Virus record (IMG/VR): IMGVR_UViG_3300045973_000169
Coordinates: 62,001 to 126,000 of that record
Length of the DNA: 64,000 nt
Strand: one strand, 5' to 3'
The notes below the pieces were generated by a model. That model was not told where the DNA came from, did not search any database, and saw only the letters and a program-made list of their open reading frames with translations. A program made the translations under genes and the position numbers. Shown in pieces: positions 5,803 through 50,074 of the stretch (position 1 is its first letter; the number at the start of each line of letters is the position of its first letter).

Positions 5803-5894
5803 TAAATGGCAACAGATAGTTTTGATGAATTATTTAAATAGTATGATAAACATTGTCGTTATTAACATATAGCTCAAATATTAAGGAGACCTAT

Positions 5895-6626
5895 ATGGCG
5901 TATACTACAAATACATGGATTAATAAAGCTAAAGAAATTCATAATGATAAATACGATTATTCATTAGTTAATTATTCTGGGAATAAAAATAAAGTTATCA
6001 TTATTTGTAAATTACATGGCGAGTTTTTACAAATACCAAATGATCATACGCAAGGGAGAGGATGTCGTTATTGTGGGAGTGAGTCAAAAGGGAACTATAA
6101 AAAGTTGACTATTGAAGAATTTATTCTACGGTCTAATGTAAAACATAATAATAAATATGATTATAGTAAGTCTAGTTATAATGATGGATATAAGACAAAA
6201 ATATGTATAATTTGTCCTGATCATGGAGAATTCTTTTCAACTGGGAATAATCATTTAAATGGGAGTGGTTGTCCAATTTGTAATGAGTCCAAAGGTGAAA
6301 ACATAATACGTGAATGGCTTATTTCTAATAATATAGAATTTAGAATGTCATATAGATTTAAAGACTGTAAATCAAAACAACCTTTACCTTTTGACTTCTA
6401 TCTTCCAAATTTAAATATTTGCATTGAATATGATGGTGAACAACATTTTAAGGCTACATGGCCTAGAAATGATAAGGATATTGCTACGAAAAATCTTATA
6501 ATGTTACAAGGTAGAGATAAAATTAAAGATTTATATTGTATTAATAATAAAATAAAACTAATAAGGATCCCTTATAATAAATTCAAAAATATTGGACTTA
6601 TTTTAGAGGATAAAATAAAAGGATAA
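5895..6626 (+). CDS. free-standing homing endonuclease, Zn-ribbon repeats + PD-(D/E)xK domain
   Basis: Repeated KYDYS...IC..HGEF...H..G.GC..C modules, PFDFYLP..CIEYDGEQHF; SD ggag before ATG 5895. Confidence 0.85.
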   Translation: MAYTTNTWINKAKEIHNDKYDYSLVNYSGNKNKVIIICKLHGEFLQIPNDHTQGRGCRYCGSESKGNYKKLTIEEFILRSNVKHNNKYDYSKSSYNDGYKTKICIICPDHGEFFSTGNNHLNGSGCPICNESKGENIIREWLISNNIEFRMSYRFKDCKSKQPLPFDFYLPNLNICIEYDGEQHFKATWPRNDKDIATKNLIMLQGRDKIKDLYCINNKIKLIRIPYNKFKNIGLILEDKIKG

Positions 6627-6628
6627 AT

Positions 6629-7756
6629 ATGGATTTATCAGAAATGTTTAAGTATGGAAAAGTTAAATGTGCTCCTACTATGAATACTGAACAGAGGTTT
6701 TCTACTAATGTTCATATAGTTGGATGTGGAGGGACTGGAAGTAGACTAATCCCTTTAGTTGCTCAAGCAATAGCTATACATAACCAGATAATTGCAACTC
6801 AGCCTAATCATAAGGAATATCTTAAAGGACCTATTAATTTAGTCCTCTATGATTGTGATGAAGGCGTTGAGTTGAAGAATCTTGAAAGACAAGGATTCAT
6901 TCCTAGTGATATTGGGAAAAGAAAAGAAGTAGTATTGGCTGAAAGATATGGTGCATGTTTTGGCATTGATATAACTTATGTATCTGATAAGATTAAGTAC
7001 GAGAATACTGTCTTCTCTGGAGCCAATAATATATTCTGTGATTGTACTGACAATCTAAGTGCTAGAAGAGCTATTGAGGATATCTATTATAGGTATTATT
7101 CTAATTGTGTTCTTATTTCTGGTGGTAATGGTGAAGACTTTGGTCAAGCAATGGTCTCATTTAAGTCTAATAATACTAACTTAAATATGAAAACAAAGCA
7201 TTTTACTGATGAAATATTCAGACTGAAATCTTTAATTGATCATCCAGATGTTAAGACTAATAAGACTATTAATATTCTTCCTACTCTATTAGAGCTATAT
7301 CCTGAATTTAAAGATACTGAAGGTCCTAGTTGTGATGAGGTTTTATTAAGGAATGAACAATCTATGCCTATTAATAACCTTGTAGCTACTCTTATGTATA
7401 ATATCTTTTATAGTGCTATCAATGGAGATCCATTTACTTATAATATGGTTAAATGTAATCTTAGTAATACATTTGATACTAAGAAGATAACACATCCTAA
7501 AGCTATGTTTGAACTTTTAGTAAGTGGGGTTACTGGCAGTAAGAATGGATATGCTGCTATTGAAGAATGGCGTAAATTGAATATTGCTCGTACTGGACAT
7601 TTTGTTCTTGTTGCTGATGTAGTTAAGTTTTTAGAACAGTATAAAAAGAAAGCACTTAATATTGTTAATGGATATATACTTGATAACTGGAAGTTAACAC
7701 CAGCAGATCATATAGTTCTTAACAATGCTATTAAGACTGTTAAGGAGGAGGATTAA
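6629..7756 (+). CDS. ThiF/E1-like activating enzyme (PRTRC ThiF-like)
   Basis: VGCGGTGS, D..VELKNLERQ, G..K..VLAERY, DCTDN..AR, PSC candidate catalytic Cys. Confidence 0.9.
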   Translation: MDLSEMFKYGKVKCAPTMNTEQRFSTNVHIVGCGGTGSRLIPLVAQAIAIHNQIIATQPNHKEYLKGPINLVLYDCDEGVELKNLERQGFIPSDIGKRKEVVLAERYGACFGIDITYVSDKIKYENTVFSGANNIFCDCTDNLSARRAIEDIYYRYYSNCVLISGGNGEDFGQAMVSFKSNNTNLNMKTKHFTDEIFRLKSLIDHPDVKTNKTINILPTLLELYPEFKDTEGPSCDEVLLRNEQSMPINNLVATLMYNIFYSAINGDPFTYNMVKCNLSNTFDTKKITHPKAMFELLVSGVTGSKNGYAAIEEWRKLNIARTGHFVLVADVVKFLEQYKKKALNIVNGYILDNWKLTPADHIVLNNAIKTVKEED

Positions 7757-7757
7757 T

Positions 7758-12958: not shown

Positions 12959-14356
12959 ATGATAAAAACGTTTATTGATATACTAGAACAATTAGAGACT
13001 ACTACTGGGACTAATGATAAAATTGCTCTTATCAAAGAGAATAAAGATAACCTAGAGTTAAAAGAGTTTCTTAGACTTGCATTAGACAAGAATGTTACGT
13101 TCGGAATAGCTGAAATTGATGAATCAGTTACAAAGTTAACTTATGAAAATAAATATACTAATGTTGAAAGATTTAAAGTTTTAACTCATATGTTATCTAC
13201 CAGAGGTTGGACTGGCGGAGATGCTATGATCCAAATTGTAGCCTTTTTGAATGGATGTATTCCGCTTGAACATAAATGGTACAAGAAGTGTCTTCAGAAA
13301 GATCTTGCATCTATCGGGATTGGACAACGTTTATTTGAAGAAGCATATGATGAAAAAGGTTTTAAGTTCCGTTTAATGCTTGCTGAATCAGAAGAAGAAC
13401 TTGATTCTATCGATGATGAAGAAGGCTGGTTAGATAAGAAGGCTAATGGTGTATGTACTATTATTAGAGTAGAAGATACTAAAGTTAGTGTTATCTATGG
13501 TGGAAGAAATGGCTTAGTAGCAGATAGCTTTTATTTCTTACAAGAAGAGACTGAGAAGCTATGCTCAGACTCACGTGTTATGTCTGATTGCGTGTTTCAT
13601 GGTGAGACCCATGTCAATGATTGTCTTGAGAATACAATGACCTTATATGGCTTTAAATTTCGTCCTATGGAGGATTTCATTGGAGCTAAAGGTAAGATTA
13701 AAGAAAAAGCATATGCCGATTACTTAGCTAAAGAAAAAGAAGTTCTTGCATTTAAGAAAGATGCTAAATTCTGTATCTTTGAACAGTTGACATTAGATGA
13801 ATGGGATACCCAAACATGTACTAGAGATTGTGATGAAAGAAAAGAAGCTTTAGCTGAATTACAAAAAGTAATTACTGAACTTGGTCTTAAAAGAATAGAG
13901 ATTATACCTACAGAGAAAGTACCTAATCAATCAGTTGCTATTGAGAAAGCTCAAGACTGGATTAAGCGTAAGTTTGAAGGTGGTATTTATAAGAGAAGTT
14001 CAGGTTTCTATGAATGGAAAAGGTCTAGAAATTCTATTAAGATTAAAGAAGTAGTAGATTTTGAAATTGAGTTTGATTCATTTGAAATCCAAAAGAAGAA
14101 GCATAACCCAGATGGTACTCTTAAACCTCCTATGGCTGGTAAGGTATGGGGACATGATTTAAATGGGAATCAATATAAGATTGGTACTGGTAAAGCTTTA
14201 TCTGAAGCAGTAAGAATTGATATGCTTAATAATTGGGATACTAATTATAAAGGTAAGATTGGTACTTGTTCTGCTCAAAGACCTAGTGAAAAAGGAAAGT
14301 ATATTTGTGCTCGATTGGACATTATCCGTCTTGATAGAAATAGCTTGGAGGATTAA
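12959..14356 (+). CDS. ATP-dependent DNA ligase (T4 gp30-like)
   Basis: N-terminal DBD, MLA, motif I KANG, III FHGE, IV EGGIYK, V KIK, OB-fold IGTG, R.D. Confidence 0.88.
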   Translation: MIKTFIDILEQLETTTGTNDKIALIKENKDNLELKEFLRLALDKNVTFGIAEIDESVTKLTYENKYTNVERFKVLTHMLSTRGWTGGDAMIQIVAFLNGCIPLEHKWYKKCLQKDLASIGIGQRLFEEAYDEKGFKFRLMLAESEEELDSIDDEEGWLDKKANGVCTIIRVEDTKVSVIYGGRNGLVADSFYFLQEETEKLCSDSRVMSDCVFHGETHVNDCLENTMTLYGFKFRPMEDFIGAKGKIKEKAYADYLAKEKEVLAFKKDAKFCIFEQLTLDEWDTQTCTRDCDERKEALAELQKVITELGLKRIEIIPTEKVPNQSVAIEKAQDWIKRKFEGGIYKRSSGFYEWKRSRNSIKIKEVVDFEIEFDSFEIQKKKHNPDGTLKPPMAGKVWGHDLNGNQYKIGTGKALSEAVRIDMLNNWDTNYKGKIGTCSAQRPSEKGKYICARLDIIRLDRNSLED

Positions 14357-14433
14357 TGGCAACTTACTTTACAGCAGATTTACAAAAGAGTTATTAACAT
14401 TGGTAGTTAGTTAATGTCCAAGGAGTAACTCTA

Positions 14434-14988
14434 ATGATAAATAATGCTGGTAAAAATAATCCAAATTATAAACATGGATTACATTGTGAAATAAATTATT
14501 GTGTTTGTGGTAAAGAGAAAGATTATAGATCTGAATTATGTAAATTCTGCTCTGGCAAAGAATTACAAATTACTAAAGAACAAATTTTGGAATATCTTAG
14601 TAAATCTAAATCATTGCTTGAGCTTTCTAAATATCTTAATATTTCTAGACAATCTGTAACTAGATATATCAAAAAATATGATCTTGATATTTCGCATTTT
14701 AGCCCTGGACGAAATAGACCATATAGACTTGATCAGATATTTTGTATATCAGATACAAGAATAAATGGAACTGTTAAAAAATTTCTTATTGAGAATAAAA
14801 TATTAGAATATATTTGCTCTGAATGTAAATGTAAACCAATATGGAATAATATACTATTAGTTCTTGAATTAGATCATATAAACGGAAATAGTTTAGACAA
14901 TAGAATTGAAAATTTAAGATTCTTATGTCCTAATTGTCATTCACAAACAGATACCAACAAAGGTAAAAATTCTAAAAAGAAAGAATAA
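14434..14988 (+). CDS. HNH homing endonuclease
   Basis: LELDHINGNSLDNRIENLRFLCPNCHSQT; NNPNYKHG. Confidence 0.92.
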   Translation: MINNAGKNNPNYKHGLHCEINYCVCGKEKDYRSELCKFCSGKELQITKEQILEYLSKSKSLLELSKYLNISRQSVTRYIKKYDLDISHFSPGRNRPYRLDQIFCISDTRINGTVKKFLIENKILEYICSECKCKPIWNNILLVLELDHINGNSLDNRIENLRFLCPNCHSQTDTNKGKNSKKKE

Positions 14989-14990
14989 TT

Positions 14991-15538
14991 ATGAATAGTG
15001 AGGGAAATGCAAGTCGTGGTAAGGTTTATTTTACTGCTGACTTGCATTAGTTAATTTAGGTCATAGTAACATTATCCGTTATTGCAATAGACCTTTTAAG
15101 AGTGCAGAAGAAATGGATGATACTATTATCAAAAATTTTAATGCTATTCTTAAACCTAATGATGAGTTATATATTCTAGGAGATACTTGCTTTACTGGAA
15201 GAGATCTTCGTGGATATATGGCTAATATACCAGGTCAAAAGTTTTGTATTCTTGGGAATCATGACCCTAAACAATTTGATAGTAATATCTTCGCTTGGGT
15301 TAAAGATGTTAAGATGATTAAAGTTGGAGAGCAACATATATTCTTATCTCATTATGCACATAGACAATGGCCTCAGTCTCATTATGGAGCTTGGCATTTA
15401 TATGGACATGATCATGGGACTCTAGAGGATTTTGGAATGTCAACAGATGTAGGTGTGGATTCTTGGGATTATAAGCCTGTGTCTTTTGATCAATTAAAAG
15501 AAAGATTTAAAGGGCGTGAGCCCCGCAAACATCACTAA
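14991..15538 (+). pseudogene. calcineurin-like metallophosphoesterase, interrupted by an 8-nt insertion (15048-15055)
   Basis: YFTADLH*, then in another frame LGHSNIIRYCNRPF...ILGD...LGNHD...LSHY...LYGHDH...DVGVD. Confidence 0.75.
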
Positions 15539-18863: not shown

Positions 18864-19159
18864 AATGTCCTTATGGATATCACTTTGCTGTGGACTGGGG
18901 AATGTTTCCTGAGTGTGATAGCGTATGCCCTAATCCAGAGTACCATTACTGTAAGACTGTTAGAAGTGAATGTACTCATAAAGCTGATTTTGGATCAGAG
19001 ATTATAGCAAATAGAGAAGCTAGGCTTCTATCAAATGAAAAAAGAAATTTTAATGGCTATCAGTGCAGTTACTGTGGTGGGTGGCATATAGGTCGTGGTT
19101 AAAAGTTTTTCTAAGCGGAACTGAGTTATTAACATATGTGCTAATGGAGGGCATATGTT

Positions 19160-19759
19160 ATGATAGGAATATATTTTATAAAGAATAAAATAAATAATAA
19201 AATGTATATAGGGCTTAGTACTAATATAGAAAATCGTTTTTTATTTCATAAACGAAGACTTTTAAGTAATACTCATAAAAATTCTCATTTTCAGTCATCT
19301 TTTAATGAAAATGGAATTGAAAATTTTGAATTTGGAATATTAGAAGAATGCATTGAAGTTATTCTATCTGAACGTGAGAAATATTGGATTTCTTTTTATA
19401 GGAGCCACAATCGAGAGTTTGGATATAATAAAACTTTTGGTGGGGAGTTTGGTAAAATGTCTGATGAAATCAATGAAAGAAGAAGGCAAAAACTTAAATT
19501 GCAAACTATTCCACAAGAAATGCGTGATAGAATCAGTAAAACATTAACTGGCAGAAAACAACCTAAAGAAGTAGTTGATAATAGGGCAAAGTCTTGTAGA
19601 AAATGTAATGATGAAATTGAGCAAAAAATAATAGATTTATATATTAATAAAAAATTAAATACTAAACAAATTTCTGAATTGTTGAATATAAAAAGAACAA
19701 CAGTTATTAGTATAGTTAAAAGGAATAAAAATGCTAGCAGCCCTAATGGGAACGTGTAA
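19160..19759 (+). CDS. GIY-YIG homing endonuclease
   Basis: GIYFIKN...YIGLS..R...E..W...GYN; C-terminal HTH. Confidence 0.92.
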   Translation: MIGIYFIKNKINNKMYIGLSTNIENRFLFHKRRLLSNTHKNSHFQSSFNENGIENFEFGILEECIEVILSEREKYWISFYRSHNREFGYNKTFGGEFGKMSDEINERRRQKLKLQTIPQEMRDRISKTLTGRKQPKEVVDNRAKSCRKCNDEIEQKIIDLYINKKLNTKQISELLNIKRTTVISIVKRNKNASSPNGNV

Positions 19760-20144
19760 TGGTAGTCTTTGGAGAGATGAATTAATCCCCCAATTAGAAG
19801 TTGATTATTTTAATCCTGTGGTTGCAGATTGGACTCCAGAATGTCAAGATGTTGAGCTTCAAAAAAGAGAAGAAGCGGATTTTGTTATCTATGTTATTAC
19901 TCCTAAAATGAAAGGCTTCTACTCTATTGCAGAAGCTGTTCATGATAGCTGTGATCAACCTTGGAAAACTATCTTTTGCTTCTTAATTGAAGACGAAGGT
20001 GAAACTTTTGATAAACATCAGATTAAATCTTTGGAAGCAACTGCTGCTCTTATATTAAGAAACGGTGGATTTATTGCTAAAGATCTTGCTGAAATTGCTT
20101 TTTGTGTTAATGCGGTAGCTAAAGCCTATGTCCAAAACAGTTAA
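19731..20144 (+). CDS. nucleoside 2-deoxyribosyltransferase-like protein
   Basis: GTCNGSLWRDELI...YFNPVV.DW...E.....D...YVITP.M.G.YSIAE. Confidence 0.75.
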   Translation: MLAALMGTCNGSLWRDELIPQLEVDYFNPVVADWTPECQDVELQKREEADFVIYVITPKMKGFYSIAEAVHDSCDQPWKTIFCFLIEDEGETFDKHQIKSLEATAALILRNGGFIAKDLAEIAFCVNAVAKAYVQNS

Positions 20145-20228
20145 GCTAATAATGATCACACCAGAGAACAAACTATATTAACTATGTAGTTATTAACAGT
20201 TACCATAATTAATAATTGGAGAACTGTT

Positions 20229-20999
20229 ATGCAAGATAGAGAATATATAATTTATTGTTTTTTAGATGAGAATAATAAACCTTATTATGTTGGACAAACT
20301 TATAATCTTAAGATGAGATTAAATGCCCATAATCAATTTATTTTAGATATTGAAGAAAAAAGATTACCATCTAAATACCCATATTATCGTAAGGCTAGAG
20401 ATTTATTTAAAAATGGTATAGGATTAAAAGTAAATATATTAGAAAATAATCTTACCAAAAAAGAAGCAGACTTAAAAGAGTCTGAATATATTAGTAAGTT
20501 TAGAAATGATATTTCCTGTAAGTTATTAAATATTTTAGCTGGTGGTGAATTTAATCAAAGAAATAAATTTGTGTCTGATGAAACAAAAAAGAAAATAAGT
20601 GAATCTAAAAAAGGGAAAAAACTTACAGAAAAACATAAAGAGTCTTTAAGAAATTGTGATAGGAAACAAAGGAACTGGACAGAAGAAGATAAAATTAAAT
20701 ATGCTAAAATGGCAAAAATAAATTTATTGAATAAACAAACTCCAGAGAGTATTGAAAAGATGCGTCAGTCTAAAGTTGGGCAAAAACATTCTGAAGAAAC
20801 TAAAAGTAAAATAGCAAGATTTGGGAAAGATCATAAAAGAGCAAAGCACTATTTGATTATTGCCCCAGATGGGACTAATTACGATATTCATGGACTTTCT
20901 TCTTTTTGTAAAGAATTTGATTTAAACCAAAGTGGACTATGGCATGCTCTTAATAAAGGAAATGGTAAATATAAGGGATGGCAAATTCAAGAACTGTAA
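20229..20999 (+). CDS. GIY-YIG homing endonuclease with NUMOD3 repeats
   Basis: IIYCF...YYVGQT..R...E...LLN; SDETKKKIS / HSEETKSKI repeats. Confidence 0.9.
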   Translation: MQDREYIIYCFLDENNKPYYVGQTYNLKMRLNAHNQFILDIEEKRLPSKYPYYRKARDLFKNGIGLKVNILENNLTKKEADLKESEYISKFRNDISCKLLNILAGGEFNQRNKFVSDETKKKISESKKGKKLTEKHKESLRNCDRKQRNWTEEDKIKYAKMAKINLLNKQTPESIEKMRQSKVGQKHSEETKSKIARFGKDHKRAKHYLIIAPDGTNYDIHGLSSFCKEFDLNQSGLWHALNKGNGKYKGWQIQEL

Positions 21000-22168
21000 A
21001 GTTAATTTATGTAAATGGGATTGGGGCTAACAATAATAAGTTCTATGATATGATCGATACAGAAGACGGATATTTTACTATTAAATATGGTCGAGTAGGA
21101 TCTACTGAAACTGTAGATAAGAAAGCTATTGGTAAATGGGATTCTGTATATAGAGAGAAGACTCGTAAGGGTTATAAAGATATTACTAAGTTGTATATAG
21201 AAGAGAAAGTGGATGTAGTTGATTTTGCTGATATTAGTGATTATGCTATTAAAGAGATAATTGCTAAATTGCAAGCTTATTCTAAGAAACAAGTAACTAC
21301 ATTCTATACTATCTCTGCTGAAAAAGTAACTAAGAAACAAGTAGATGAAGCTCAAACTATTTTAGATGGATTGATCCCATGTAAAGATGTTGAGTGTGCC
21401 AATAAGCTACTTATTGATTTATACTCTGTTATACCTAGAGCTATGAGTCATGTTAAGCATCATTTACTTTCTAGTTTTGAACAGAAAACTCTTGATAATA
21501 TGATAGCTAGAGAACAATCTATTCTTGACTCAATGGCTTCTTCTGTTAAGCAGGTTGAACTTGTAAGAGAGAATATAGATTCTAGTAAGACTTTACTTGA
21601 TGCTCTTGGTGTAGAAGTATATCAAACAATGCCTAGTGATGTAGATCTTATTAAAATGAAATTAGATAACTTAGTTGATAGATATTTGAACTCATTTAGA
21701 GTAGTTAACAAAAAGACTCAGGTTAAGTTTGATAATTTTGTAAATAAAATTGATAACAAAAAGACAGAGTTATTCTGGCATGGGAGTAGAAATGAAAACT
21801 GGATTTCAATACTTGAAACTGGTTTGGTCTTACGTCCGACCAATGCTGTTATTTCTGGGAAGATGTTTGGGTATGGCACCTACTTCGCAGACAAGGCTCA
21901 AAAATCCCTAGGATATACCTCTTCTTATGGTTCACTGTGGGCTAAAGGAAGTTCTAATGAAGCCTATATGTCATTGTTTGATGTCCATGTTGGGAATCAA
22001 TATATAGTTGAACAGAGTGAATCTAACCTTGATGCACAAAAGTTAAAGGCTAAAGGTAACTTTCATTCTACTTTTGCTAAAGCTGGTAGATCATTAATGA
22101 ACAATGAATATATTGTTTATGATGAAGATCAATCTACAATTAAATATCTTGTACAATTAAAAGGATAA
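20978..22168 (+). CDS. WGR-domain PARP-like ADP-ribosyltransferase
   Basis: NKFY...YGRVG (WGR); LY..IP regulatory-like region; catalytic WHGS, GKMFGYGTYFAD..KS.GY, NEYIVY (H-Y-E triad). Confidence 0.9.
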   Translation: MANSRTVKLIYVNGIGANNNKFYDMIDTEDGYFTIKYGRVGSTETVDKKAIGKWDSVYREKTRKGYKDITKLYIEEKVDVVDFADISDYAIKEIIAKLQAYSKKQVTTFYTISAEKVTKKQVDEAQTILDGLIPCKDVECANKLLIDLYSVIPRAMSHVKHHLLSSFEQKTLDNMIAREQSILDSMASSVKQVELVRENIDSSKTLLDALGVEVYQTMPSDVDLIKMKLDNLVDRYLNSFRVVNKKTQVKFDNFVNKIDNKKTELFWHGSRNENWISILETGLVLRPTNAVISGKMFGYGTYFADKAQKSLGYTSSYGSLWAKGSSNEAYMSLFDVHVGNQYIVEQSESNLDAQKLKAKGNFHSTFAKAGRSLMNNEYIVYDEDQSTIKYLVQLKG

Positions 22169-24402: not shown

Positions 24403-24480
24403 CATTGCCTTTTGACCCAATCATAGGGTTTAGACCAAAGTAGTTATTAACAATTAGAAATAAATTCTAGGAGTTATATT

Positions 24481-25077
24481 ATGCTGTGTTACTATGGTTG
24501 TGGTCAAGAGGCCGGGTTTGAATTAAAGAATGGAAGACATATATGTTCTTCATCATCAAATCAATGTCCAGTACAAAAAAAGAAAAATTCAGAGAATAGT
24601 AATAATAGATATTTTAAAATTAATGCCTCTGCTATTAAAAGTAAATGTAAGTTCTGTAACAAAGAGATTTCATCTACTAGTATTAAAGTTCATGAATTAA
24701 ATTGTTTTCTTAATCCAGAAAATATTAAATTATGTCCTGTATGTAATAAGCCAATTAAAAATTTTAGAAAATCAAATACATGCTCTTATGGTTGTTCGAA
24801 TACATTTTTTAGAAGCGGTAAAGATCATCCAAATTGGAAAGAGGATATAGATTGTGGATATAGAAAAATATGTTTTAGTGTCCATAAAAAAGAATGTATT
24901 ATATGTGGAGAAGTTAAAATAGTTGCAGTACATCATTTTGATGAAAATAAAAATAATAATAATATTGATAATTTAATTCCTTTATGTCCTACACACCATG
25001 TATATTGGCATTCAGGATATAAAAATGAAATTGAACAAAAAGTAATTGATTATAGAAATAAATTTAAATCTGCTTAA
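24481..25077 (+). CDS. HNH homing endonuclease
   Basis: HPNWK, CIICG...VHH.DEN..NN...NLIPLCPTHH. Confidence 0.9.
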   Translation: MLCYYGCGQEAGFELKNGRHICSSSSNQCPVQKKKNSENSNNRYFKINASAIKSKCKFCNKEISSTSIKVHELNCFLNPENIKLCPVCNKPIKNFRKSNTCSYGCSNTFFRSGKDHPNWKEDIDCGYRKICFSVHKKECIICGEVKIVAVHHFDENKNNNNIDNLIPLCPTHHVYWHSGYKNEIEQKVIDYRNKFKSA

Positions 25078-29495: not shown

Positions 29496-30128
29496 TAATA
29501 TCCTCTTTTGTAGTCCCTCTTGTTTTAAAACCCACCTCTTAGTAGTACCCCTTTATTAACACAACCTCTCTTGCAGTACACTAAAAATTTAGTAGGTAAT
29601 ATGTATATAAAATTAATTTTAAATAAAGAAGATTTAACTGGAACTTGTAAAGACTATCCTATAGACCAAATAACCTGTTCAAGTTTCAAATCCAGAGTAT
29701 GCTTAAAGATATTAGAAGCTAACTATGTAGTATATCTCCCTGGAGATTTTGACGGAGATGAAGTTAAGATACTTAAGGATAGACCATGATAGCATATAAA
29801 TTGTTCCGTCAACTTAAAAACGGTGAGATAGCTCCATTATTTATAAATAAAAAACTTAGACTTTCTCAGAATGTATGGTATAATGCTGAATCTCATCGTA
29901 CTAAAGGATTTGCTTTTAGACCAGGATTCCATGTAACATCTAAACCAGTAGCTCCTCATCTATCTGAAAAGGATAGAGTATGGAAACAAGTAGAAATAGA
30001 AGATTATGTAGAAATTAAACGTCCAGATTCACAAGGTGGATTATGGATGCTTGCACAACGTATGAAAGTACTAGACTCCACAATCTAACTATGGTTATTA
30101 ACAGATAGAGCAATGGGGGCTCTGTCTT

Positions 30129-30893
30129 ATGAATAAATTAACACAAGAACAATGGATTGATAAAGCTAATAAAATCCACAATTATAAATATGATTATTCT
30201 AAATTAAAATATACTCATAATAAAAATAAAGTTTCTATTACATGTAAAAAACATGGGATATTTCAACAGCTTGCTAGAAATCATATTTTAGGTTCTGGTT
30301 GTAAAGAATGTATGAAAGATTCTCTTTCTGATAAATTTGCATTATCAAAAGAAGAATTTATTAATAAATCAAATAAATTGCATAATAATAAATATGATTA
30401 TAGTAAAGTTAAATATAAAAATTATAATAGTATAATTTGTATCATTTGTCCTGAGCATGAAGAATTTTGGCAAGAAGCCAGTAATCATTTATGTGGCAAT
30501 GGTTGTCCAGCATGCAATGAATCTAAAGGTGAAGTGAAAATTAGATTATTTTTAAATAAATATAAATTTAATTATACTGTTCAAGAATGGTTTAAGAATT
30601 CTAATATTCAATGTAAAAATCCACAAACAAATACTAAGATGCCTTTTGATTTCTATCTCCCAGACTGCAATACTTGTATTGAATATGATGGTGAACAACA
30701 TTATAAACCACATTCTTTTGGAGCTGATAAATCAATTGAAACAAAAGAAAAAAATTTAAAAATAATGCAATATAGGGATAGTATTAAGACCTTATATTGT
30801 TTAGAAAATAAAATAAAATTAATTAGAATACCATATGTTATGTTTAATAATATAGATATTATTTTAATGAAAGAATTATTAAATGAGAAATAA
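30129..30893 (+). CDS. homing endonuclease, Zn-ribbon + PD-(D/E)xK (paralog of 5895-6626)
   Basis: KYDYS repeats, GCPACNESKGE, PFDFYLP..CIEYDGEQHY. Confidence 0.87.
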   Translation: MNKLTQEQWIDKANKIHNYKYDYSKLKYTHNKNKVSITCKKHGIFQQLARNHILGSGCKECMKDSLSDKFALSKEEFINKSNKLHNNKYDYSKVKYKNYNSIICIICPEHEEFWQEASNHLCGNGCPACNESKGEVKIRLFLNKYKFNYTVQEWFKNSNIQCKNPQTNTKMPFDFYLPDCNTCIEYDGEQHYKPHSFGADKSIETKEKNLKIMQYRDSIKTLYCLENKIKLIRIPYVMFNNIDIILMKELLNEK

Positions 30894-31583
30894 ATGTACT
30901 AAAGAAATTCCAATGATAAAAGATGCTATGGGTCAATGGGAACATGAAGGGGCTAAATGTATTGGTTCTAACTTTGATGATACTAAAGAGTATTGGGAAT
31001 GTTCTGATTGTGGTACTAAATGGAATATATATTATGAAAATTAAAGCTTATGGACTATGGTACTTAGCTAATAGAATGAAGGTATTATAATGGAAACTAT
31101 AATTGAGTTTGAACGTATTGGATATAAATGTAAAACAATTTCTTCAATCCAAACAATATATAAAACAAAAAAAGAATTTAGTGATAATTATACTATAGAA
31201 GAAGCTTTATCTGGAGAAGAGAAGGTTGGCTATCATTATAAATTTTATCTTGAAGATAATATTAAATATACATCGTCAATCGAAATTACATCATTAGAAA
31301 AAATTATATTTAAAGAAGATGCTAAGTATGAAATTAAAATACTTATTAAAGAGTTGGGATAAATAATGATAGTAGTTTATGAAGATACAATACTCGAGAA
31401 AATTAATAAAATAATTGTTGATAATAAGAGACCAATTTCATATATAGAATTAACTGATGTGGAATTTCTTCAATTTAGTGTTTTCTCTGGGCTTGGGACT
31501 CCAAAAATTATTAAAGATAAAAATGGAGATAACCATATTGGTCTATTTTATAAAGGTACAATTATCCGAAAGGAAAGAGTCTA

Positions 31584-40149: not shown

Positions 40150-40422
40150 ATGATAGGGATTTTAGCAACTATACTAACAATTGGATCTATATTACCCCAA
40201 ATAAAAAAGACATGGGAATCAAAATCAGTTGATGATTTATCTCTATGGCAAATGGTAATCCTTACAATAGGAATATTGTTTTGGTTACTATATGGTATTC
40301 AGATTCATGATACTGTTGTTATAGTTGCTAACTCTATTAGCTTATTGCTTCAGTTATTTATGATTGGAATGAAACAAATATATGGAAGTAAGGAATACAA
40401 ATGTCTAAAACACTTAAGATGA
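40150..40422 (+). CDS. SemiSWEET / PQ-loop small transporter
   Basis: LPQIKK..SKSV.DLS, WLLYG, VIVAN; 3 TM. Confidence 0.85.
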   Translation: MIGILATILTIGSILPQIKKTWESKSVDDLSLWQMVILTIGILFWLLYGIQIHDTVVIVANSISLLLQLFMIGMKQIYGSKEYKCLKHLR

Positions 40423-40492
40423 TTAACCTATACGACTCGGTATGCAATAACAAGTTAATAACATATATCTGAATTAAGTTGAGGTAAATGTT

Positions 40493-41032
40493 ATGAAAAT
40501 TTGTGGGAAATGTAAAGAAGAGAAAGATAGTTGTGAGTTTGCTAGTAATGTGTCAGCCAAAGATAAGCTTTCTAATTGGTGTAAAAAATGCATAAAAGAT
40601 AATGTGAAAAGAATTAAATTAGAAAAAGAAAAAGGGATTTATATACCAAAGGTTAGAAAGCCAAGACTAACAGAAGAAGATAGAATTAAAAGAAATGAAG
40701 AATTAAAAAGATATCATAGTAACTATAGATTAGATAATTTTGAACGTATACAAAAAGTTAAAAAAGAATATAGAGATAATATAAAAATAGAAGGAATTAT
40801 TGCTTATGGCGGGAAATGTTCTTGCTGTGGAGAGTCTGCCTATGAATTTTTAACTATTGAACATTTAAAAGGAAGAGACCCAAACGAGAAGAGACTCACT
40901 GGAAAGAAAATGTGGGCTAAGGCAAAAGCTGAAAATTACCCTGATAAATATACTGTTCTTTGTTTTAATTGTAATTGTGCTAAAGGAGCATTTGGAATAT
41001 GTCCACACCAGAATATAGTAACAAAAAATTAA
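40493..41032 (+). CDS. HNH-type homing endonuclease
   Basis: YGGKCSCCGE...LTIEH...LCFNCNCAKG. Confidence 0.85.
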   Translation: MKICGKCKEEKDSCEFASNVSAKDKLSNWCKKCIKDNVKRIKLEKEKGIYIPKVRKPRLTEEDRIKRNEELKRYHSNYRLDNFERIQKVKKEYRDNIKIEGIIAYGGKCSCCGESAYEFLTIEHLKGRDPNEKRLTGKKMWAKAKAENYPDKYTVLCFNCNCAKGAFGICPHQNIVTKN

Positions 41033-41541
41033 AGATCGTAAATTTATTTGCGGGGCCAGGCGCTGGCAAATCTACAACTGCTGCTGGTCTATTCTACCTT
41101 ATGAAAATTGAAGGGTTTAGTGTTGAACTAATTACTGAATATGCTAAAGAAAAAGTTTATGAAGGGCATTTTGGAACCTTATCAGACCAAATTTATATAT
41201 TTGGGAAACAACAAAGACGTGCGAAGAAGCTAATTGGTCATGTAGAATATGCTATAACCGATAGTCCACTTATGCTGTCTACCCTTTACAACAAAGACCT
41301 TAGTGACTCTTTTGAAGACCTAGTTTATGAAACATATAGTTCATATGAAAATATTAACTTCTTTATTAATAGATGTAAGCCTTATGTTAAAATAGGGAGA
41401 GAACAAGATGAATCAGAAGCTATTGCATTAGATAATAAACTAATTAGGCTACTATCTAATTGGGCTATTGACTATGAGAAGATAGATGGTTTATCTACAG
41501 CACCACAAACAATACTTGACCATATTAAAGGGATTAGATAA
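40999..41541 (+). CDS. P-loop nucleoside/nucleotide kinase-like (NadR/AAA-type) protein
   Basis: NLFAGPGAGKST, TEYAKE, ITDSP, GR.Q. Confidence 0.8.
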   Translation: MSTPEYSNKKLKIVNLFAGPGAGKSTTAAGLFYLMKIEGFSVELITEYAKEKVYEGHFGTLSDQIYIFGKQQRRAKKLIGHVEYAITDSPLMLSTLYNKDLSDSFEDLVYETYSSYENINFFINRCKPYVKIGREQDESEAIALDNKLIRLLSNWAIDYEKIDGLSTAPQTILDHIKGIR

Positions 41542-47893: not shown

Positions 47894-48123
47894 ACAATGT
47901 CATATAATCTTGCACGTAGAGTATTAAGAGCAGAAAAGAAAGAATTTGTAACATCTTGGAAAAAGAAAAATAAAGTTAGTGATCAAAGCATAGCTAAATA
48001 TATCTCGAATAAAAATAAGAAAATGAGTCTTGAAAATCAATATGAAGCGATTCTTGAGATTACATTTAATGCCTTGCAGAAGCAGGCAGAAGCAGCTAAA
48101 ACTCCTAGTGAAGAGGTAATTTA

Positions 48124-49242
48124 ATGGCTCCAAAAAAAGAGAAAGCAACTGTAAAAACATCTGGATTAACTTACGAAGAAGCAGTCAAGGTTGTTAAAGC
48201 AGCAAAAGGGTCACAAAGTATTATTGGATCTGAAATCCCTGAGTATTGTTCTGTTAGGAAAATTAGGACTGGTATCCCAACCCTAGATTATGAATTAGGT
48301 GGTGGTATCAGTGAAGGTCGTATTACTATTATGGGTGGTAAACCTAGTTCTGCTAAGACTACCACTACCCTACAAGGTCCGGTTTCAGCTCTTATTAATG
48401 AGATCAAAGCTAGTGGCGAAACAAAATTTGGACTTATTGTAGATTCAGAAGGCGGATATGATTCTCCTTATGCTAGAGCATTAGGTGTAGATGAAAAGTA
48501 TCTTATTATTAAACGTAAGAAAGTTATTGAAGATGCATTCCAAGAGATAGATGATCTGATTTCTATGGGACTTATTAAGTTTCTTGTTATAGATTCATTG
48601 GATACAATGGTTTCGAAGAAAGGTGATGATAATAAGTATGCTGCTACAATGGGTGGTACTGCTGGAGCTTTGGCTCAACATCTCCCTGTTTTATATGAAA
48701 AGATTATGGAATGGAATGTTACAACAATTATTATTAAACAAGCTCGTGTTAAGATTGGTGGTTTTAATCCAACTGGGAATGAGATAATTCAACTATCTGG
48801 TGGTTATGCACTAAAGCATCTAGCTGATAGTATTTTCATTGTAAACAGATTATCTAACAAGAATCTATCTTATACTCCTATCCAATTAAAAGCAGTTAAG
48901 ACTAGAAGCTCTAGACTTGGACTTATTATGGATATGCCTTTAGGCTCATGTGGGATTGATGTTGTTCATGATGCTATTGCTCTTGCTATTGGACATGGAT
49001 TGATTACTACGGGTGGCGGTGGTTGGACTCAGTTAGATGATGACCAAGGAAAGATCCTAGTCAGAGAACAAGGACTTGATAAATTTGTTGCTAAGATTAA
49101 AGATAGTGCTACATTAACCCAATCACTTATAGATAGTGTTTATCTTAATATTATTGATACTGCACTTGTTGGTAGGAATACTACTGAAGGTGGAGATCTT
49201 ATTTCCGATATTGAAAATGAGAAAGAAAAAGTAGAAGAATAA
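48124..49242 (+). CDS. recA: RecA/UvsX-like recombinase
   Basis: TG...LD..LGGG...GR, Walker A GKPSSAKTT, DSE, VIDS, Q.R..IG, SGG.AL.H. Confidence 0.85.
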   Translation: MAPKKEKATVKTSGLTYEEAVKVVKAAKGSQSIIGSEIPEYCSVRKIRTGIPTLDYELGGGISEGRITIMGGKPSSAKTTTTLQGPVSALINEIKASGETKFGLIVDSEGGYDSPYARALGVDEKYLIIKRKKVIEDAFQEIDDLISMGLIKFLVIDSLDTMVSKKGDDNKYAATMGGTAGALAQHLPVLYEKIMEWNVTTIIIKQARVKIGGFNPTGNEIIQLSGGYALKHLADSIFIVNRLSNKNLSYTPIQLKAVKTRSSRLGLIMDMPLGSCGIDVVHDAIALAIGHGLITTGGGGWTQLDDDQGKILVREQGLDKFVAKIKDSATLTQSLIDSVYLNIIDTALVGRNTTEGGDLISDIENEKEKVEE

Positions 49243-49321
49243 TGGCTATCGCAAAGCAATATGCAACACGTAATAAAAATTAGTTATTAACATATGTAAT
49301 TAACTATTTATGGAGTTACAT

Positions 49322-50074
49322 ATGAAACAAAAAATTAATTTATTAAATATAAGATTTGGCAGACTCCTGGTAATACAGGAGTCTGAAAAAACATCTTATA
49401 ATAGAACACAATGGCTTTGTAAGTGTGATTGTGGGAATGAAGTTAAAGTTGCTACAACAAGCTTACAATCGGGAGCTACTGTATCATGTGGTTGCTTTAG
49501 GATAGAGCAATGCAGTAAAAAACTTTCATTAGATTTAATTGGTAAAAAATTTGGGAAATTACTTGTTTTGGAAAGAAAAGGATCTCAAAAACTTAATGGA
49601 GAAAATTATAAATATGCAAGGTCAGTATGGCTTTGTTTGTGTGATTGTGGGAAAACTTATGAAGTTACAGGGCAATTACTTATATTAAATAAAGTTTGTT
49701 CATGTGGCTGTGCTTCAGTTATAAGTGGCGAAAAACATCATAATTGGAATCCAAATAAAACGGATGAAGAAAGGTTACAACATCGAGATACCAAAGAGTA
49801 TTTTAAATGGCGTAAATCTATATTCAATAAATTTAATTGGACATGCCAATGTTGTAAAGTTAAGAGACATTTAGGACTAAATGCACATCATATCCAAAAT
49901 TACTCAAATCATAAAGAATTAAGATTTAATATTGATAATGGTTTACTATTATGTAGATATTGTCATAGAAAATTTCATAAAGAATATGGTAGAAAAAATA
50001 ATAATATTTCTCAATTAAAGGAATTTTTACAAAATAATGAAAAAGAAACAGTACTGCACAAGGATGCTTCTTAA
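49322..50074 (+). CDS. HNH homing endonuclease
   Basis: FG.L.V...W.C.CDCG repeats, HHNW, AHHI...NG..LC..CH..FH. Confidence 0.9.
   Translation: MKQKINLLNIRFGRLLVIQESEKTSYNRTQWLCKCDCGNEVKVATTSLQSGATVSCGCFRIEQCSKKLSLDLIGKKFGKLLVLERKGSQKLNGENYKYARSVWLCLCDCGKTYEVTGQLLILNKVCSCGCASVISGEKHHNWNPNKTDEERLQHRDTKEYFKWRKSIFNKFNWTCQCCKVKRHLGLNAHHIQNYSNHKELRFNIDNGLLLCRYCHRKFHKEYGRKNNNISQLKEFLQNNEKETVLHKDAS

What the first reader, a model, noticed from the sequence alone, without database searches (positions are those of the whole stretch)
5806..50074. Homing endonucleases sit between an orphaned gene 5' stub and a recoded replacement N-terminus
Seen at six protein genes: a short dead stub upstream of the endonuclease matches the N-terminus of the gene downstream of it. 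5806-5841 MATDSFDELFK* vs E1 MDLSEMFK. 14356 MATYFTADL vs 14991 ..KVYFTADLH. 19102-22 KVFLSGT (frameshifted start) vs MLAALMGT-CNG. 20128-81 MSKTVKLIMITPENKLY* vs PARP MANSRTVKLIYVNGIGANNNKFY. 40401 MSKTLKMINLY vs MSTPEYSNKKLKIVNLF. 49242-83 MAIAKQYATR vs MKKKQYCTR. In four cases the new start overlaps the endonuclease 3' end. Three unrelated nuclease families (HNH, GIY-YIG, PD-(D/E)xK) show this. Inference: a splicing-free invasion strategy in which the element lands in the first codons of a gene, destroys its own target site and rescues the gene by supplying a new translation start. The stubs would mark the cleavage/insertion sites.
Basis: partly seen in the sequence, partly recalled or inferred. 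Interest (0 to 1): 0.8.

Follow-up and report, generated by a model that had tools for sequence, protein, structure and literature searches.

The report
Homing endonucleases carrying replacement gene starts
In this pond phage, selfish nuclease genes sit inside the first (once the last) codons of host genes and a tRNA, each next to a substitute copy of the displaced gene end while the old end survives as a dead stub; this splicing-free way of invading genes is known from fungal mitochondria, and I found no phage report of it.

Summary
The pattern is real. All six stubs read as described. Five are supported beyond chance or by relatives; site 1 is not. Endonuclease-free relatives start the same genes at the stub position with stub-like sequence: L057, L012, L014, L065 and L005.

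At site 3 the family consensus (M)KKVFLGGT|CNGS equals stub plus body. The same GIY-YIG gene sits at the identical nucleotide junction in four phages.

Introns are excluded in practice. There are no Rfam hits and only 37-59 nt of non-coding space. One stub has an internal stop and another has lost its ATG.

I found two further firm cases: a tRNA-Leu 5' half and a mirror-image C-terminal case.

I also found a shared leader in front of 10 of the 11 endonuclease genes. It is the palindromic motif GTTATTAACA plus a hairpin over the start codon.

Caveats:
- At site 2 the replacement start is 8 nt out of frame, so that gene looks dead.
- At sites 1 and 4 the nearest endonuclease-free relative carries the "new" N-terminus, so which copy is native is unsettled.
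- Cleavage sites and target immunity are untested.

The closest precedent is the fungal mitochondrial mobile ORFs that carry replacement C-termini. This is a new variant of a known kind.

The parts
5806..5856 (+). s1 stub: MATDSFDELFK*YDKHC, a putative old start of the ThiF/E1 gene. This is the weak case.
   Evidence: Its ATG follows the stop of the upstream JAB gene directly, as the ThiF ORF does in L057. Similarity is not significant.
5858..5867 (+). Leader motif GTTATTAACA of the s1 cassette. The hairpin runs 5866-5897.
5895..6626 (+). s1 homing endonuclease, with DUF723/DUF4379 zinc fingers and a DUF559-like C-terminal domain.
6629..7756 (+). ThiF/E1-like gene with the functional start MDLSEMFKYGKV.
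14356..14384 (+). s2 stub MATYFTADL(H), the old start of the metallophosphoesterase. Its ATG overlaps the ligase stop.
   Evidence: L057 starts MAIYWSADLHFGH. 93 of 110 homologues have the same spacing.
14390..14399 (+). Leader motif of the s2 cassette.
   Evidence: hairpin z=-3.4.
14434..14988 (+). s2 HNH homing endonuclease (HNH_3/HNH plus NUMOD1/HTH).
14991..15050 (+). s2 replacement N-terminus ORF MNSEGNASRGKVYFTADLH*. It is out of frame with the gene body.
15048..15055 (+). The 8 nt TAGTTAAT that break the frame between the replacement N-terminus and the body.
   Evidence: Identical in the Logan contig of run X1.
15056..15538 (+). Phosphoesterase body LGHSNIIRYCNRPF..., with no in-frame start before M at 15113.
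19102..19122 (+). s3 stub KVFLSGT. The ATG is lost. This is the old start of the nucleoside 2-deoxyribosyltransferase-like gene.
   Evidence: The same junction occurs in L060, L063 and L146.
19125..19134 (+). Leader motif of the s3 cassette.
   Evidence: z=-4.6.
19160..19759 (+). s3 GIY-YIG homing endonuclease with a C-terminal HTH.
19731..20144 (+). NDT-like gene. Its functional start MLAALMGT|CNGS overlaps the HE 3' end.
20128..20181 (+). s4 stub MSKTVKLIMITPENKLY*, the old start of the PARP/WGR gene.
   Evidence: The L005 PARP starts MATRTAKLLMITPENNNKFY. L004 has the stub MAKMIKLIM.
20189..20198 (+). Leader motif of the s4 cassette.
20229..20999 (+). s4 GIY-YIG plus NUMOD3 homing endonuclease.
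20978..22168 (+). PARP-like gene (WGR plus PARP catalytic domain). Its functional start overlaps the HE 3' end.
28382..28413 (+). 5' half of a tRNA-Leu-like gene, ending at the anticodon loop. It is a stub upstream of an HNH cassette.
28417..28895 (+). Leader motif (28417-28426), hairpin and HNH endonuclease (28452-28895). The complete tRNA-Leu follows at 28899-28984.
30038..30088 (+). C-terminus GLWMLAQRMKVLDSTI* attached to gene 29786-30088. This is the copy in use in the mirror-image case.
30094..30893 (+). Leader motif (30094-30103) and a DUF723-type endonuclease (30129-30893) that is 53% identical to the s1 enzyme. The small ORF 30883-31044 follows.
31052..31090 (+). C-terminal stub GLWYLANRMKVL*. 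Its TAA overlaps the ATG of the next gene (31090).
40401..40433 (+). s5 stub MSKTLKMINLY, the old start of the AAA_28 P-loop gene. Its ATG lies inside the 3' end of the upstream gene.
   Evidence: L014 starts MNNLKIIY at the same position.
40454..41032 (+). Leader motif in its reverse-complement form GTTAATAACA (40454-40463), hairpin and HNH-type endonuclease (40493-41032).
40999..41541 (+). AAA_28 gene with the functional start MSTPEYSNKKLKIVNLF, which overlaps the HE 3' end.
49242..49283 (+). s6 stub MAIAKQYATRNKN*. Its ATG overlaps the stop of the recA-like gene.
   Evidence: It is colinear with endonuclease-free L012 up to TATGCAAC.
49283..50074 (+). Leader motif (49283-49292), hairpin and HNH endonuclease. 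The ORF runs from 49310, and the likely start is the ATG at 49322, which follows GGAG.
50037..50957 (+). 306-aa gene of unknown function with the functional start MKKKQYCTR, which overlaps the HE 3' end.
24443..25077 (+). Leader motif plus HNH endonuclease in the tRNA array. No stub was recognised.
26560..27115 (+). Leader motif plus HNH endonuclease overlapping the start of tRNA-Ser(GCT) at 27106. A possible weak tRNA 5' stub lies at 26527-26559.

Best explanation
These are free-standing homing-endonuclease (HE) cassettes lodged inside the terminal codons of their target genes. Neither an intron nor an intein is involved.

Each cassette has three parts:
- a common leader: the palindromic motif GTTATTAACA plus a hairpin that buries the ribosome-binding site or start codon of the nuclease gene;
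- the nuclease ORF;
- a diverged second copy of the displaced gene end, which is the copy now in use. Its start codon and often its Shine-Dalgarno sequence lie in or just after the nuclease 3' end.

The other copy is left as an untranslated, decaying stub that still abuts the neighbouring gene.

Shown here:
- the anatomy;
- presence/absence polymorphism among relatives;
- stub-like starts in endonuclease-free alleles;
- recurrence of one cassette at one exact junction in four phages;
- absence of intron features;
- saturation of synonymous sites between the two copies.

Inferred:
- The structure arose when an HE cut the gene near its end and the break was repaired from a diverged donor that offered homology on the gene-body side only. 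This is one-sided, illegitimate double-strand-break repair.
- Such repair imports the nuclease gene together with the donor's gene end and strands the recipient's own end.
- Once formed, the stub plus the gene body can serve as the two homology arms for ordinary homing.
- The leader probably delays or limits nuclease expression, as in phage T4.
- The host gene is normally rescued. Site 2 appears to have lost that rescue.
For: Anatomy and coordinates.

Nuclease identities.

Statistics:
- Stub versus new N-terminus: s2, s4 and s5 P<0.01, s6 P=0.05.
- s3 stub versus the family N-terminus: P=0.0007.

Endonuclease-free relatives with the gene starting at the stub position:
- L057 phosphoesterase MAIYWSADLHFGH;
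- L012 MATQKIYATR..., colinear DNA from the upstream gene into the stub and then into the body;
- L014;
- L065 MNGKVFLGGTCND;
- L005 PARP ..LMITPENNNKFY.

Family-typical stubs against atypically extended functional copies:
- s2: 93 of 110 homologues have the stub's spacing;
- the C-terminal case.

Recurrence:
- The same GIY-YIG enzyme (59-61% identical) with the same GGxACT|GAG junction, a stub and an overlapping new start occurs in L060, L063 and L146.
- The same enzyme occurs without a stub in L148 and L149, as expected of a donor-type arrangement.
- L004 keeps the stub, 13 tail codons of the nuclease and the new start after the nuclease ORF was deleted at an AATG microhomology.

Extra cases: a tRNA-Leu 5' half and a C-terminal mirror image.

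Deep divergence of the two copies: 36 of 51 residues are identical, but only 10 of 34 identical residues keep the same codon.

No introns.

Leader:
- Motif exact 10 times against 0.42 expected.
- 9 of the 10 exact copies precede nuclease genes.
- The motif is absent from endonuclease-free L057.
- It is present before nucleases of further families in L004, L012, L014 and L146.
- Hairpins are predicted in 10 of 10 leaders, with z<=-2 in 9.

Precedent for the mechanism: one-sided illegitimate break repair in T4 intron homing, and T4 endonuclease-specific promoters plus RBS hairpins (PMC2988022).
Against: - At s2 the replacement N-terminus is 8 nt out of frame with the body, so the gene is not rescued in this genome. 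The same sequence is in the Logan contig.
- The s1 stub is not statistically distinguishable from chance.
- At s1 and s4 the closest endonuclease-free relatives (L057, L059) carry the window's 'new' type N-terminus at a native gene junction. The window PARP is uniformly about 63% identical to L057 PARP with no visible conversion tract. The stub could therefore be the imported copy there.
- Every stub ends 0-20 nt before the leader motif. Random microhomology joining does not predict this regularity.
- No RNA data exist for this phage, and only one DNA run holds it, so splicing is excluded by anatomy only.
- No cleavage or homing was demonstrated.
Confidence: 0.75

Rival explanations
1. The cassettes are self-splicing introns (group I or II) that encode endonucleases. 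The stub is exon 1 and is spliced to the gene body.
For: At s2, stub and body would join in frame to give the family motif DLHLGH (..GATTTACA|TTTAGGTCAT), and the alternative start is out of frame. One JGI annotation labels a homologue of the s3 enzyme 'group I intron endonuclease'.
Against: - No group I or II match at the gathering threshold over the whole window, nor at E<=1 over 5.7-31.2 kb and 40-51.2 kb.
- Only 37-59 nt of non-coding sequence lie upstream of each nuclease ORF, and 0-2 nt or an overlap downstream. That leaves no room for a ribozyme core.
- The s1 stub contains a stop codon and the s3 stub has no start codon.
- The in-frame join at s2 would need splice sites after A and after A. 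The group I rule is U before the 5' site and G before the 3' site (my own reading of the sequence).
- An intron has no need for a second copy of exon 1.
- L004 keeps the new start without the nuclease.
Confidence: 0.03
2. The same architecture, with the polarity reversed. The functional gene end is the resident one, and the stub is foreign DNA that travels with the nuclease cassette as a relic of a former host's gene.
For: - L057 and L059 (endonuclease-free) have the window's functional-type N-termini for ThiF and PARP at native junctions. The PARP body shows no conversion tract.
- The s3 stubs of the window and L063 share the lost ATG and 26 of 33 nt, although their upstream genes are unrelated.
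Against: - Stubs keep the typical stop/start overlap with the neighbouring resident gene, and at s6 they are colinear with the endonuclease-free relative from the upstream gene into the stub.
- At s2, s3, s5 and the C-terminal case the stub is the family-typical form and the functional copy has an atypical extension.
- The nuclease 3' ends overlap the functional starts. This ties the nuclease to that copy.
Confidence: 0.15
3. The stubs are scars of ordinary mosaic recombination at gene boundaries between diverged phages. They are unrelated to nuclease action, and the nucleases merely occupy intergenic space.
For: Gene neighbourhoods around these genes differ among relatives. Nuclease genes are known to sit at boundaries of genetic exchange (PMC10448857).
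Against: - In a 64-kb window, 7 to 9 of 11 nuclease genes are flanked by such duplications.
- The duplicated segment always belongs to the gene that touches the nuclease.
- The s3 junction is identical in four phages.
- I did not scan nuclease-free gene boundaries systematically, so the contrast is not quantified.
Confidence: 0.05
4. The similarities are chance, or the stubs are small functional upstream ORFs.
For: The stubs are short (7-17 codons). s1, and the internal comparison at s3, are not significant.
Against: - The remaining sites are significant.
- s3 matches the family consensus.
- Stub positions are colinear with endonuclease-free relatives.
- The s3 stub lacks a start codon in two phages.
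- The tRNA and C-terminal cases cannot be upstream ORFs.
Confidence: 0.02

Closest known systems
Mobile endonuclease ORFs (mORFs) of fungal mitochondria that form hybrid genes. Examples are Allomyces macrogynus atp6 and Glomus sp. atp6, atp9, cox2 and nad3 (PMC3630166).
   Same: An endonuclease ORF is inserted at the end of a host gene. It brings a diverged replacement copy of the gene terminus that is used in place of the native one. The native terminus persists beyond the ORF as an unused remnant, and no splicing is involved. The window's case at 29786-31090 has exactly this C-terminal polarity.
   Different: - Most cases here are at the 5' end. The element therefore has to supply a translation start and ribosome-binding site, or the 5' half of a tRNA.
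- The nuclease is a separate ORF, not fused in frame to the host gene.
- The host is a bacteriophage.
- At least seven sites occur in one 64-kb stretch.
- All cassettes share one leader motif and hairpin.
Free-standing homing endonucleases of T4-like phages (seg and mob genes; intronless homing) (PMC2988022; PMC2330249, listed).
   Same: - GIY-YIG and HNH enzymes lie between or at genes without an intron.
- Their presence varies among relatives.
- Signals for downstream host-gene expression are embedded in the nuclease gene.
- There are endonuclease-specific promoters and hairpins that sequester the RBS.
- SegB sits in a tRNA gene cluster.
   Different: The review of the T4 cases describes intergenic insertion without a duplicated, diverged gene terminus or a stub. 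I found no mention of duplication in it.
One-sided, illegitimate double-strand-break repair during T4 intron homing, as summarised in PMC2988022.
   Same: It provides a demonstrated route by which an endonuclease-containing segment enters a site that has homology on one side only. The other junction forms at microhomology.
   Different: It is an experimental outcome with engineered substrates. Here it is only inferred as the origin of natural structures, and it does not by itself explain why every stub ends next to the leader motif.
Group I intron-encoded homing endonucleases, for example I-TevI and I-Bth0305I (PMC3239194, listed).
   Same: The nuclease families are the same. The insertion lies inside a coding sequence or tRNA at a precise position. 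The flanking gene segments can serve as homology arms.
   Different: There is no ribozyme, and the gene is kept intact by a duplicate terminus instead of by RNA splicing.
Genes split by endonuclease insertion, such as Aeromonas phage Aeh1 nrdA split by mobE. I recall this from my own knowledge and did not check it here.
   Same: A free-standing nuclease sits inside a host coding region without splicing.
   Different: There the two gene pieces are both translated and assemble into a working protein. Here one piece is a dead stub and is replaced by a duplicate.

Membership tests
Free-standing homing endonuclease gene | Encodes a nuclease of a recognised HE family. | tested here: met
   Pfam finds HNH, HNH_3 and GIY-YIG with NUMOD1 or NUMOD3. 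PHROGs labels all of them homing, HNH or intron-encoded nucleases. The s1-type C-terminal domain is nearest to DUF559/DUF2726 (lead only).
Free-standing homing endonuclease gene | Not embedded in an intron or an intein. | tested here: met
   No intron families were found. At most 59 nt of flanking non-coding sequence is available. The ORFs are separate from the host genes and in other frames.
Free-standing homing endonuclease gene | Presence/absence polymorphism at the same locus among related genomes. | tested here: met
   L057, L012, L014, L059 and L065 lack the nuclease. The window, L060, L063, L146, L148 and L149 have the s3 enzyme.
Free-standing homing endonuclease gene | Site-specific cleavage of the endonuclease-free allele and gene conversion into it. 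| not testable with these tools
   This needs enzyme assays or phage crosses. Contigs of the only run that holds the phage show no endonuclease-free variant.
Group I intron with an endonuclease ORF | Ribozyme core (P1-P9) flanking or surrounding the ORF. | tested here: not met
   Rfam finds nothing at the gathering threshold or at E<=1. Non-coding space is 37-59 nt upstream and 0-2 nt or an overlap downstream.
Group I intron with an endonuclease ORF | Exons join into an intact reading frame at U|...G| splice sites. | tested here: not met
   The s1 stub has an in-frame TAG and the s3 stub has no ATG. The only in-frame join at s2 needs A|...A| (my own reading).
Group I intron with an endonuclease ORF | Spliced RNA is observed. 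| not testable with these tools
   No RNA run holds this sequence.
Intein | In-frame insertion within the host protein, with protein-splicing blocks. | tested here: not met
   The nuclease ORFs have their own starts and stops and are out of frame with the host genes. Pfam finds no intein domains.
Mitochondrial-type mORF / hybrid-gene element | An endonuclease ORF at a gene end, accompanied by a replacement copy of that end in phase with the gene. | tested here: met
   In phase at s1, s3, s4, s5, s6 and the C-terminal case. Not in phase at s2, where an 8-nt break intervenes.
Mitochondrial-type mORF / hybrid-gene element | The native terminus persists beyond the ORF as an unused remnant. | tested here: met
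   Stubs at 5806, 14356, 19102, 20128, 40401, 49242, 28382 and 31052.
Mitochondrial-type mORF / hybrid-gene element | The remnant resembles the relatives' native sequence more than the inserted copy does. | tested here: inconclusive
   True for s2, s3, s5, s6 and the C-terminal case. The opposite holds for s1 and s4 against L057 and L059. All relatives are only about 50-70% identical.
Mitochondrial-type mORF / hybrid-gene element | C-terminal position, often fused in frame to the host gene, in a mitochondrial genome. | tested here: not met
   Seven of the eight firm or probable cases are 5'-terminal. The ORFs are separate. The genome is a 206.6-kb phage contig.
T4-type endonuclease expression control | A hairpin that sequesters the RBS or start codon of the nuclease gene. 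| tested here: met
   Predicted in 10 of 10 leaders, with z from -1.0 to -4.6. This is in silico only.
T4-type endonuclease expression control | A dedicated middle or late promoter placed so that its transcripts lack the 5' arm of the hairpin. | not testable with these tools
   The motif GTTATTAACA sits at the right place, but no transcription start data exist.
Transposon with target-site duplication | Identical short direct repeats of fixed length, together with a transposase. | tested here: not met
   The repeats are 21-54 nt, of variable length, and saturated at synonymous sites. There is no transposase.

The most novel reading that the evidence does not exclude
The stub is not only a scar. 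In this reading, [stub + common leader + nuclease + replacement terminus] is a self-contained homing unit. It would be a third general solution, beside introns and inteins, that lets homing endonucleases live inside essential sequence. At least five nuclease families in this phage clade would use it, on protein genes and tRNA genes alike.

The stub would be kept under constraint as the left homology arm, as an operator bound by the nuclease itself (compare I-TevI autorepression), or as both. The shared palindromic leader would be a clade-specific control element that every incoming nuclease gene must acquire.
Probability: 0.3. Interest if true: 0.8.

Novelty: new variant of a known kind. Interest (0 to 1): 0.6.

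Why it matters
Homing endonucleases are usually said to avoid killing their host gene in one of three ways: by hiding in a self-splicing intron, by hiding in an intein, or by staying intergenic.

This phage shows a fourth route used repeatedly. The element sits inside the first codons of a gene and brings a spare copy of those codons with its own start signals. That route needs no RNA or protein splicing.

Three consequences follow:
- It explains short 'orphan' ORFs and apparent gene-start anomalies next to nuclease genes in phage annotations.
- It creates hybrid genes, and so drives exchange of gene termini between diverged phages.
- It offers natural pairs of cut and uncut target sequences for at least six uncharacterised nucleases, which helps in mapping their specificity.

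The shared leader suggests that a phage imposes a common expression control on all its resident selfish nucleases.

Tried and rejected
- **Near-identity search in INPHARED:** a megablast of 18 kb found no match. tblastn found only distant relatives.
- **Read and contig laying on the only run that holds the phage (X1, pond DNA):** one identical contig, with no endonuclease-free variant, no indel at the s2 break and no joints. It gives neither population nor RNA evidence.
- **Intron search:** negative at all thresholds.
- **'Immunising' N-terminus idea at s3:** I considered that ALMGT in place of FLGGT marks endonuclease-linked alleles. I rejected it. L063, L146, L148 and L149 have the nuclease with FLGGT, and L061, which has ALMGT, has no recognisable nuclease upstream.
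- **Conversion tract in PARP:** sliding identity of the window against L004, L057, L003 and L005 showed no clear tract.
- **Excess conservation of the s3 stub:** its identity (26 of 33 nt) lies within the range of the neighbouring coding windows, which run from 34 to 50 of 60 nt. I do not claim it as significant.
- **Relatives with an in-frame s2-type extended N-terminus:** none were found among 150 representatives.
- **Translational bypass or frameshift at s2:** considered from the sequence and set aside. The products would lack the conserved LGH or gain LVN.
- **tRNA stubs at the 24443 and 26560 cassettes:** none is convincing.
- **PDB sequence search with the s1 nuclease:** no hit.
- **Literature:** six searches found no phage report of this architecture. 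The library lacks most subscription journals, so absence is not proof.

Full report
**Source and context**

The window is positions 62001-126000 of IMG/VR contig IMGVR_UViG_3300045973_000169 (206,638 bp). It has about 30% G+C and all genes lie on the + strand. One pond-metagenome DNA run holds it. The Logan contig of that run is identical over 14300-20290. No deposited phage is close to it.

**Check of the observation**

I scored each 78-nt region upstream of the cassette, in three frames, against the first 35 residues of the downstream gene. The null was 3000 random windows.

| Site | P (stub vs new N-terminus) |
|---|---|
| s1 | 0.29 |
| s2 | 0.002 |
| s3 | 0.83 |
| s4 | 0.003 |
| s5 | 0.007 |
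| s6 | 0.05 |

The s3 stub KVFLSGT matches the N-terminus of the protein family. About 115 of 120 homologues begin (M)K(K)VFLGGT|CNGS, and P=0.0007 against random windows. Stub plus body therefore recreates the family start.

s1 remains unsupported by sequence (P=0.12).

The nucleases are:
- HNH at s2, s5 and s6;
- GIY-YIG at s3 and s4;
- at s1, a DUF723/DUF4379 zinc-finger enzyme with a DUF559-like C-terminal domain, probably of the PD-(D/E)xK clan.

A syntenic 161-kb Logan contig (locus L057; ThiF 54% identical) has JAB followed by ThiF, ligase followed by phosphoesterase, and PARP, all without any nuclease gene.

- **s2.** The L057 phosphoesterase starts MAIYWSADLHFGH, against the stub MATYFTADL. 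In 93 of 110 representative homologues the Asp of DxH lies at index 6-8, as it does in stub plus body MATYFTADLH|LGHSNIIRYCNRPF.
- **s6.** L012 (58% identical) runs colinearly with the window from the recA-like gene, through the overlapping TAATG, into MATQKIYATR. Past ..TATGCAAC it continues colinearly with the window's functional copy.
- **s5.** L014 (68% identical) starts MNNLKIIY inside the 3' end of the upstream gene, as the stub does.
- **s4.** The L005 PARP starts MATRTAKLLMITPENNNKFY, against the stub MSKTVKLIMITPENKLY*.
- **s3.** L065, from the same sample, starts MNGKVFLGGTCND with no nuclease upstream.

**Recurrence of the s3 cassette**

Homologues of the s3 GIY-YIG enzyme (59-61% identical) sit in front of the same gene in other phages.

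- L060, L063 (with L064) and L146 each have a stub ending GGxACT, followed by GAG, a leader, the nuclease and a new start that overlaps or directly follows the nuclease 3' end. The junction is identical to the nucleotide in all four phages.
- L146 belongs to the clade of L057 and carries the same GTTATTAACA leader.
- L148 and L149 have the nuclease overlapping the gene start but no stub. That is the arrangement expected of a donor.

In L004 (PARP 57% identical) the s4-type nuclease ORF is gone. What remains is the stub MAKMIKLIM fused at an AATG microhomology to the last 13 nuclease codons (..NNGKYKGWTIKIL*), followed by the new start MDYKNIIKLIYVG. The new start therefore works without the nuclease and without splicing.

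**Further cases I found in the window**

- **tRNA case.** Positions 28382-28413 are the 5' half of a tRNA-Leu-like gene, ending at the anticodon loop. An HNH cassette follows, and then the complete tRNA-Leu at 28899-28984.
- **C-terminal mirror image.** Gene 29786-30088 ends GLWMLAQRMKVLDSTI*. A cassette follows: the leader, a DUF723-type nuclease 53% identical to the s1 enzyme, and a 53-codon ORF. After it comes the stub GLWYLANRMKVL*, whose TAA overlaps the ATG of the next gene.
- Seventy-nine homologues show that this stub is a genuine family C-terminus. The closest relative ends ..GGMWYLAERMKVLE*.
- The window holds 11 nuclease genes, and no further paralogues were found. Seven have firm flanking duplications (s2-s6, the tRNA-Leu case and the C-terminal case). 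Two have weak ones (s1 and the 26560 cassette).

**The shared leader**

- GTTATTAACA occurs 10 times exactly, all on the + strand, against 0.42 expected. None of 100 shuffles reached 10.
- Nine of those copies lie 25-40 nt before a nuclease start. The s5 nuclease has the reverse-complement variant GTTAATAACA.
- The motif is absent from the 21-kb endonuclease-free L057, apart from one chance-level 9-mer.
- In L004, L012, L014 and L146 it precedes DUF723-type, HNH and LAGLIDADG nucleases.
- All ten leaders fold into a hairpin. The 5' arm starts in or just after the motif and the 3' arm ends at the start codon, with the Shine-Dalgarno sequence in the loop or the 3' arm. z-scores range from -1.0 to -4.6, and nine are at or below -2.
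- An orphan motif copy at 23815, with no nuclease behind it, does not fold this way.
- This matches the T4 pattern of endonuclease-specific middle or late promoters with RBS-sequestering hairpins (PMC2988022). The promoter role here is inferred.

**Introns and inteins**

- No group I or II intron family matches, at the gathering threshold over the whole window or at E<=1 over both regions.
- Only 37-59 nt separate a stub from its nuclease start. The nuclease stop either abuts or overlaps the new start.
- The s1 stub carries an in-frame TAG. The s3 stub lacks an ATG in both the window and L063.
- The in-frame join at s2 would violate the group I splice-site rule.
- The nuclease ORFs are out of frame with the host genes, so they are not inteins.

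**How it most likely works**

The two copies of each gene end are old alleles and not fresh duplications. Of 51 aligned residues 36 are identical, yet only 10 of 34 identical non-Met/Trp residues use the same codon.

Stubs keep the native stop/start overlap with the neighbouring gene. The functional copies often carry atypical extensions: +9 residues at s2, +6 at s5 and +4 at the C-terminal case.

The simplest origin runs as follows:
1. A nuclease that lives just upstream of gene X in one phage, overlapping its start, cuts X in a co-infecting diverged phage.
2. That phage's upstream neighbour is different, so homology exists only on the gene-body side.
3. Repair copies the donor's X terminus and the nuclease gene.
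4. The other end is joined illegitimately, which strands the recipient's own terminus.

T4 experiments show that such one-sided repair occurs (PMC2988022). Afterwards the stub and the body give two homology arms for ordinary homing. Diverged repeats also protect the nuclease gene from loss by repeat recombination, although L004 shows that microhomology deletion still happens. These steps are inferred.

**What does not fit**

- **s2 is broken.** The replacement ORF MNSEGNASRGKVYFTADLH* is followed by 8 nt (TAGTTAAT) before the body, so the body is out of frame. There is no in-frame start before Met 15113, which lies beyond metal-binding motif I. The Logan contig agrees. The gene is probably dead here. 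The rescue is therefore not universal, or has decayed.
- **Direction is unsettled at s1 and s4.** The endonuclease-free L057 and L059 carry the window's functional-type N-termini at native junctions. The PARP body shows no conversion tract.
- **Every stub ends 0-20 nt before the leader motif.** Random end-joining does not predict this.
- **The window and L063 stubs share a lost ATG** although their upstream genes are unrelated. Their identity (26 of 33 nt) is within the range of nearby coding windows.

**Comparison with what is known**

The closest described system is the mobile endonuclease ORF of fungal mitochondria. It carries a foreign replacement C-terminus and leaves the native one downstream. 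Examples are Allomyces atp6 and Glomus atp6, atp9, cox2 and nad3 (PMC3630166). The window's C-terminal case has that same C-terminal polarity, although its nuclease is a separate ORF and not fused in frame.

The 5'-terminal cases differ in three ways:
- they must supply translation starts, or a tRNA 5' half;
- the nuclease is a separate ORF;
- all share one leader.

Free-standing T4 seg and mob genes share the enzyme families and the regulatory logic, but are described as intergenic and without duplicated termini.

Six literature searches found no phage report of this architecture. The library lacks most subscription journals.

**Verdict**

The following remain untested, or fail at one site each:
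- rescue of the host gene (fails at s2);
- sequence support for the stub (fails at s1);
- whether stubs mark cleavage sites;
- whether the new copy is immune to cleavage;
- which copy is resident.

I rate it a new variant of a known kind, with interest 0.6.

Noticed in passing
window 4280-7756: The window carries a phage-borne ubiquitin-like conjugation trio. It consists of an E2-like gene (4280-5014, homologous to the L057 gene carrying Pfam Prok-E2_D), a JAB peptidase (5014-5802) and a ThiF/E1 (6629-7756). The s1 nuclease sits between JAB and E1.
   Followed up: partly
window 42718-47893; L014:7148-8150: DNA polymerase III alpha is in two pieces (42718-43890 and 45539-47893), with five small ORFs between them. 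In relative L014 the leader motif and a 302-aa nuclease follow the same break point (..LFARAVNPGRSL). The split is therefore probably another endonuclease insertion site.
   Followed up: partly
window 24236-29311: Seventeen tRNA genes are interleaved with five HNH genes. A weak tRNA-like sequence with anticodon CAT lies at 25176-25244 (Rfam 23 bits, below threshold). ARAGORN did not call it.
   Followed up: partly
window 23815-23824 and 22914-22923: An orphan exact copy of the leader motif at 23815 has neither a nuclease gene nor a hairpin behind it. It may be a relic of a lost cassette. A one-mismatch copy at 22914 precedes a 107-aa ORF (22959-23282) that has no nuclease signature.
   Followed up: partly
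window 15048-15055: Eight bases (TAGTTAAT) put the replacement N-terminus of the phosphoesterase out of frame with its body. The independent Logan assembly of the same run agrees. I cannot tell whether this is a dead gene or unexplained recoding.
   Followed up: partly
L012:442-1140: In a close relative the same leader motif precedes a LAGLIDADG endonuclease. Five nuclease families in this phage clade therefore use one leader.
   Followed up: no
L004:1228-1956 and 3420-3842 (minus strand): The relative carries a complete DUF723-type nuclease with the leader motif on the minus strand. It also has an inverted 140-aa fragment of the same family between the ligase and PARP genes.
   Followed up: no
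L057:5461-7089: The endonuclease-free relative carries adjacent reverse-transcriptase (RVT_1) and Gad2-family genes.
   Followed up: no
window 19102-19122 vs L063:1845-1868: The s3 stubs of two phages share the loss of the ATG (TAA|AAGT..), a Gly-to-Ser/Arg change and 26 of 33 nt. Their upstream genes are unrelated and the nuclease is only 60% identical. The stub may be under constraint, or the block may be inherited as a unit.
   Followed up: partly
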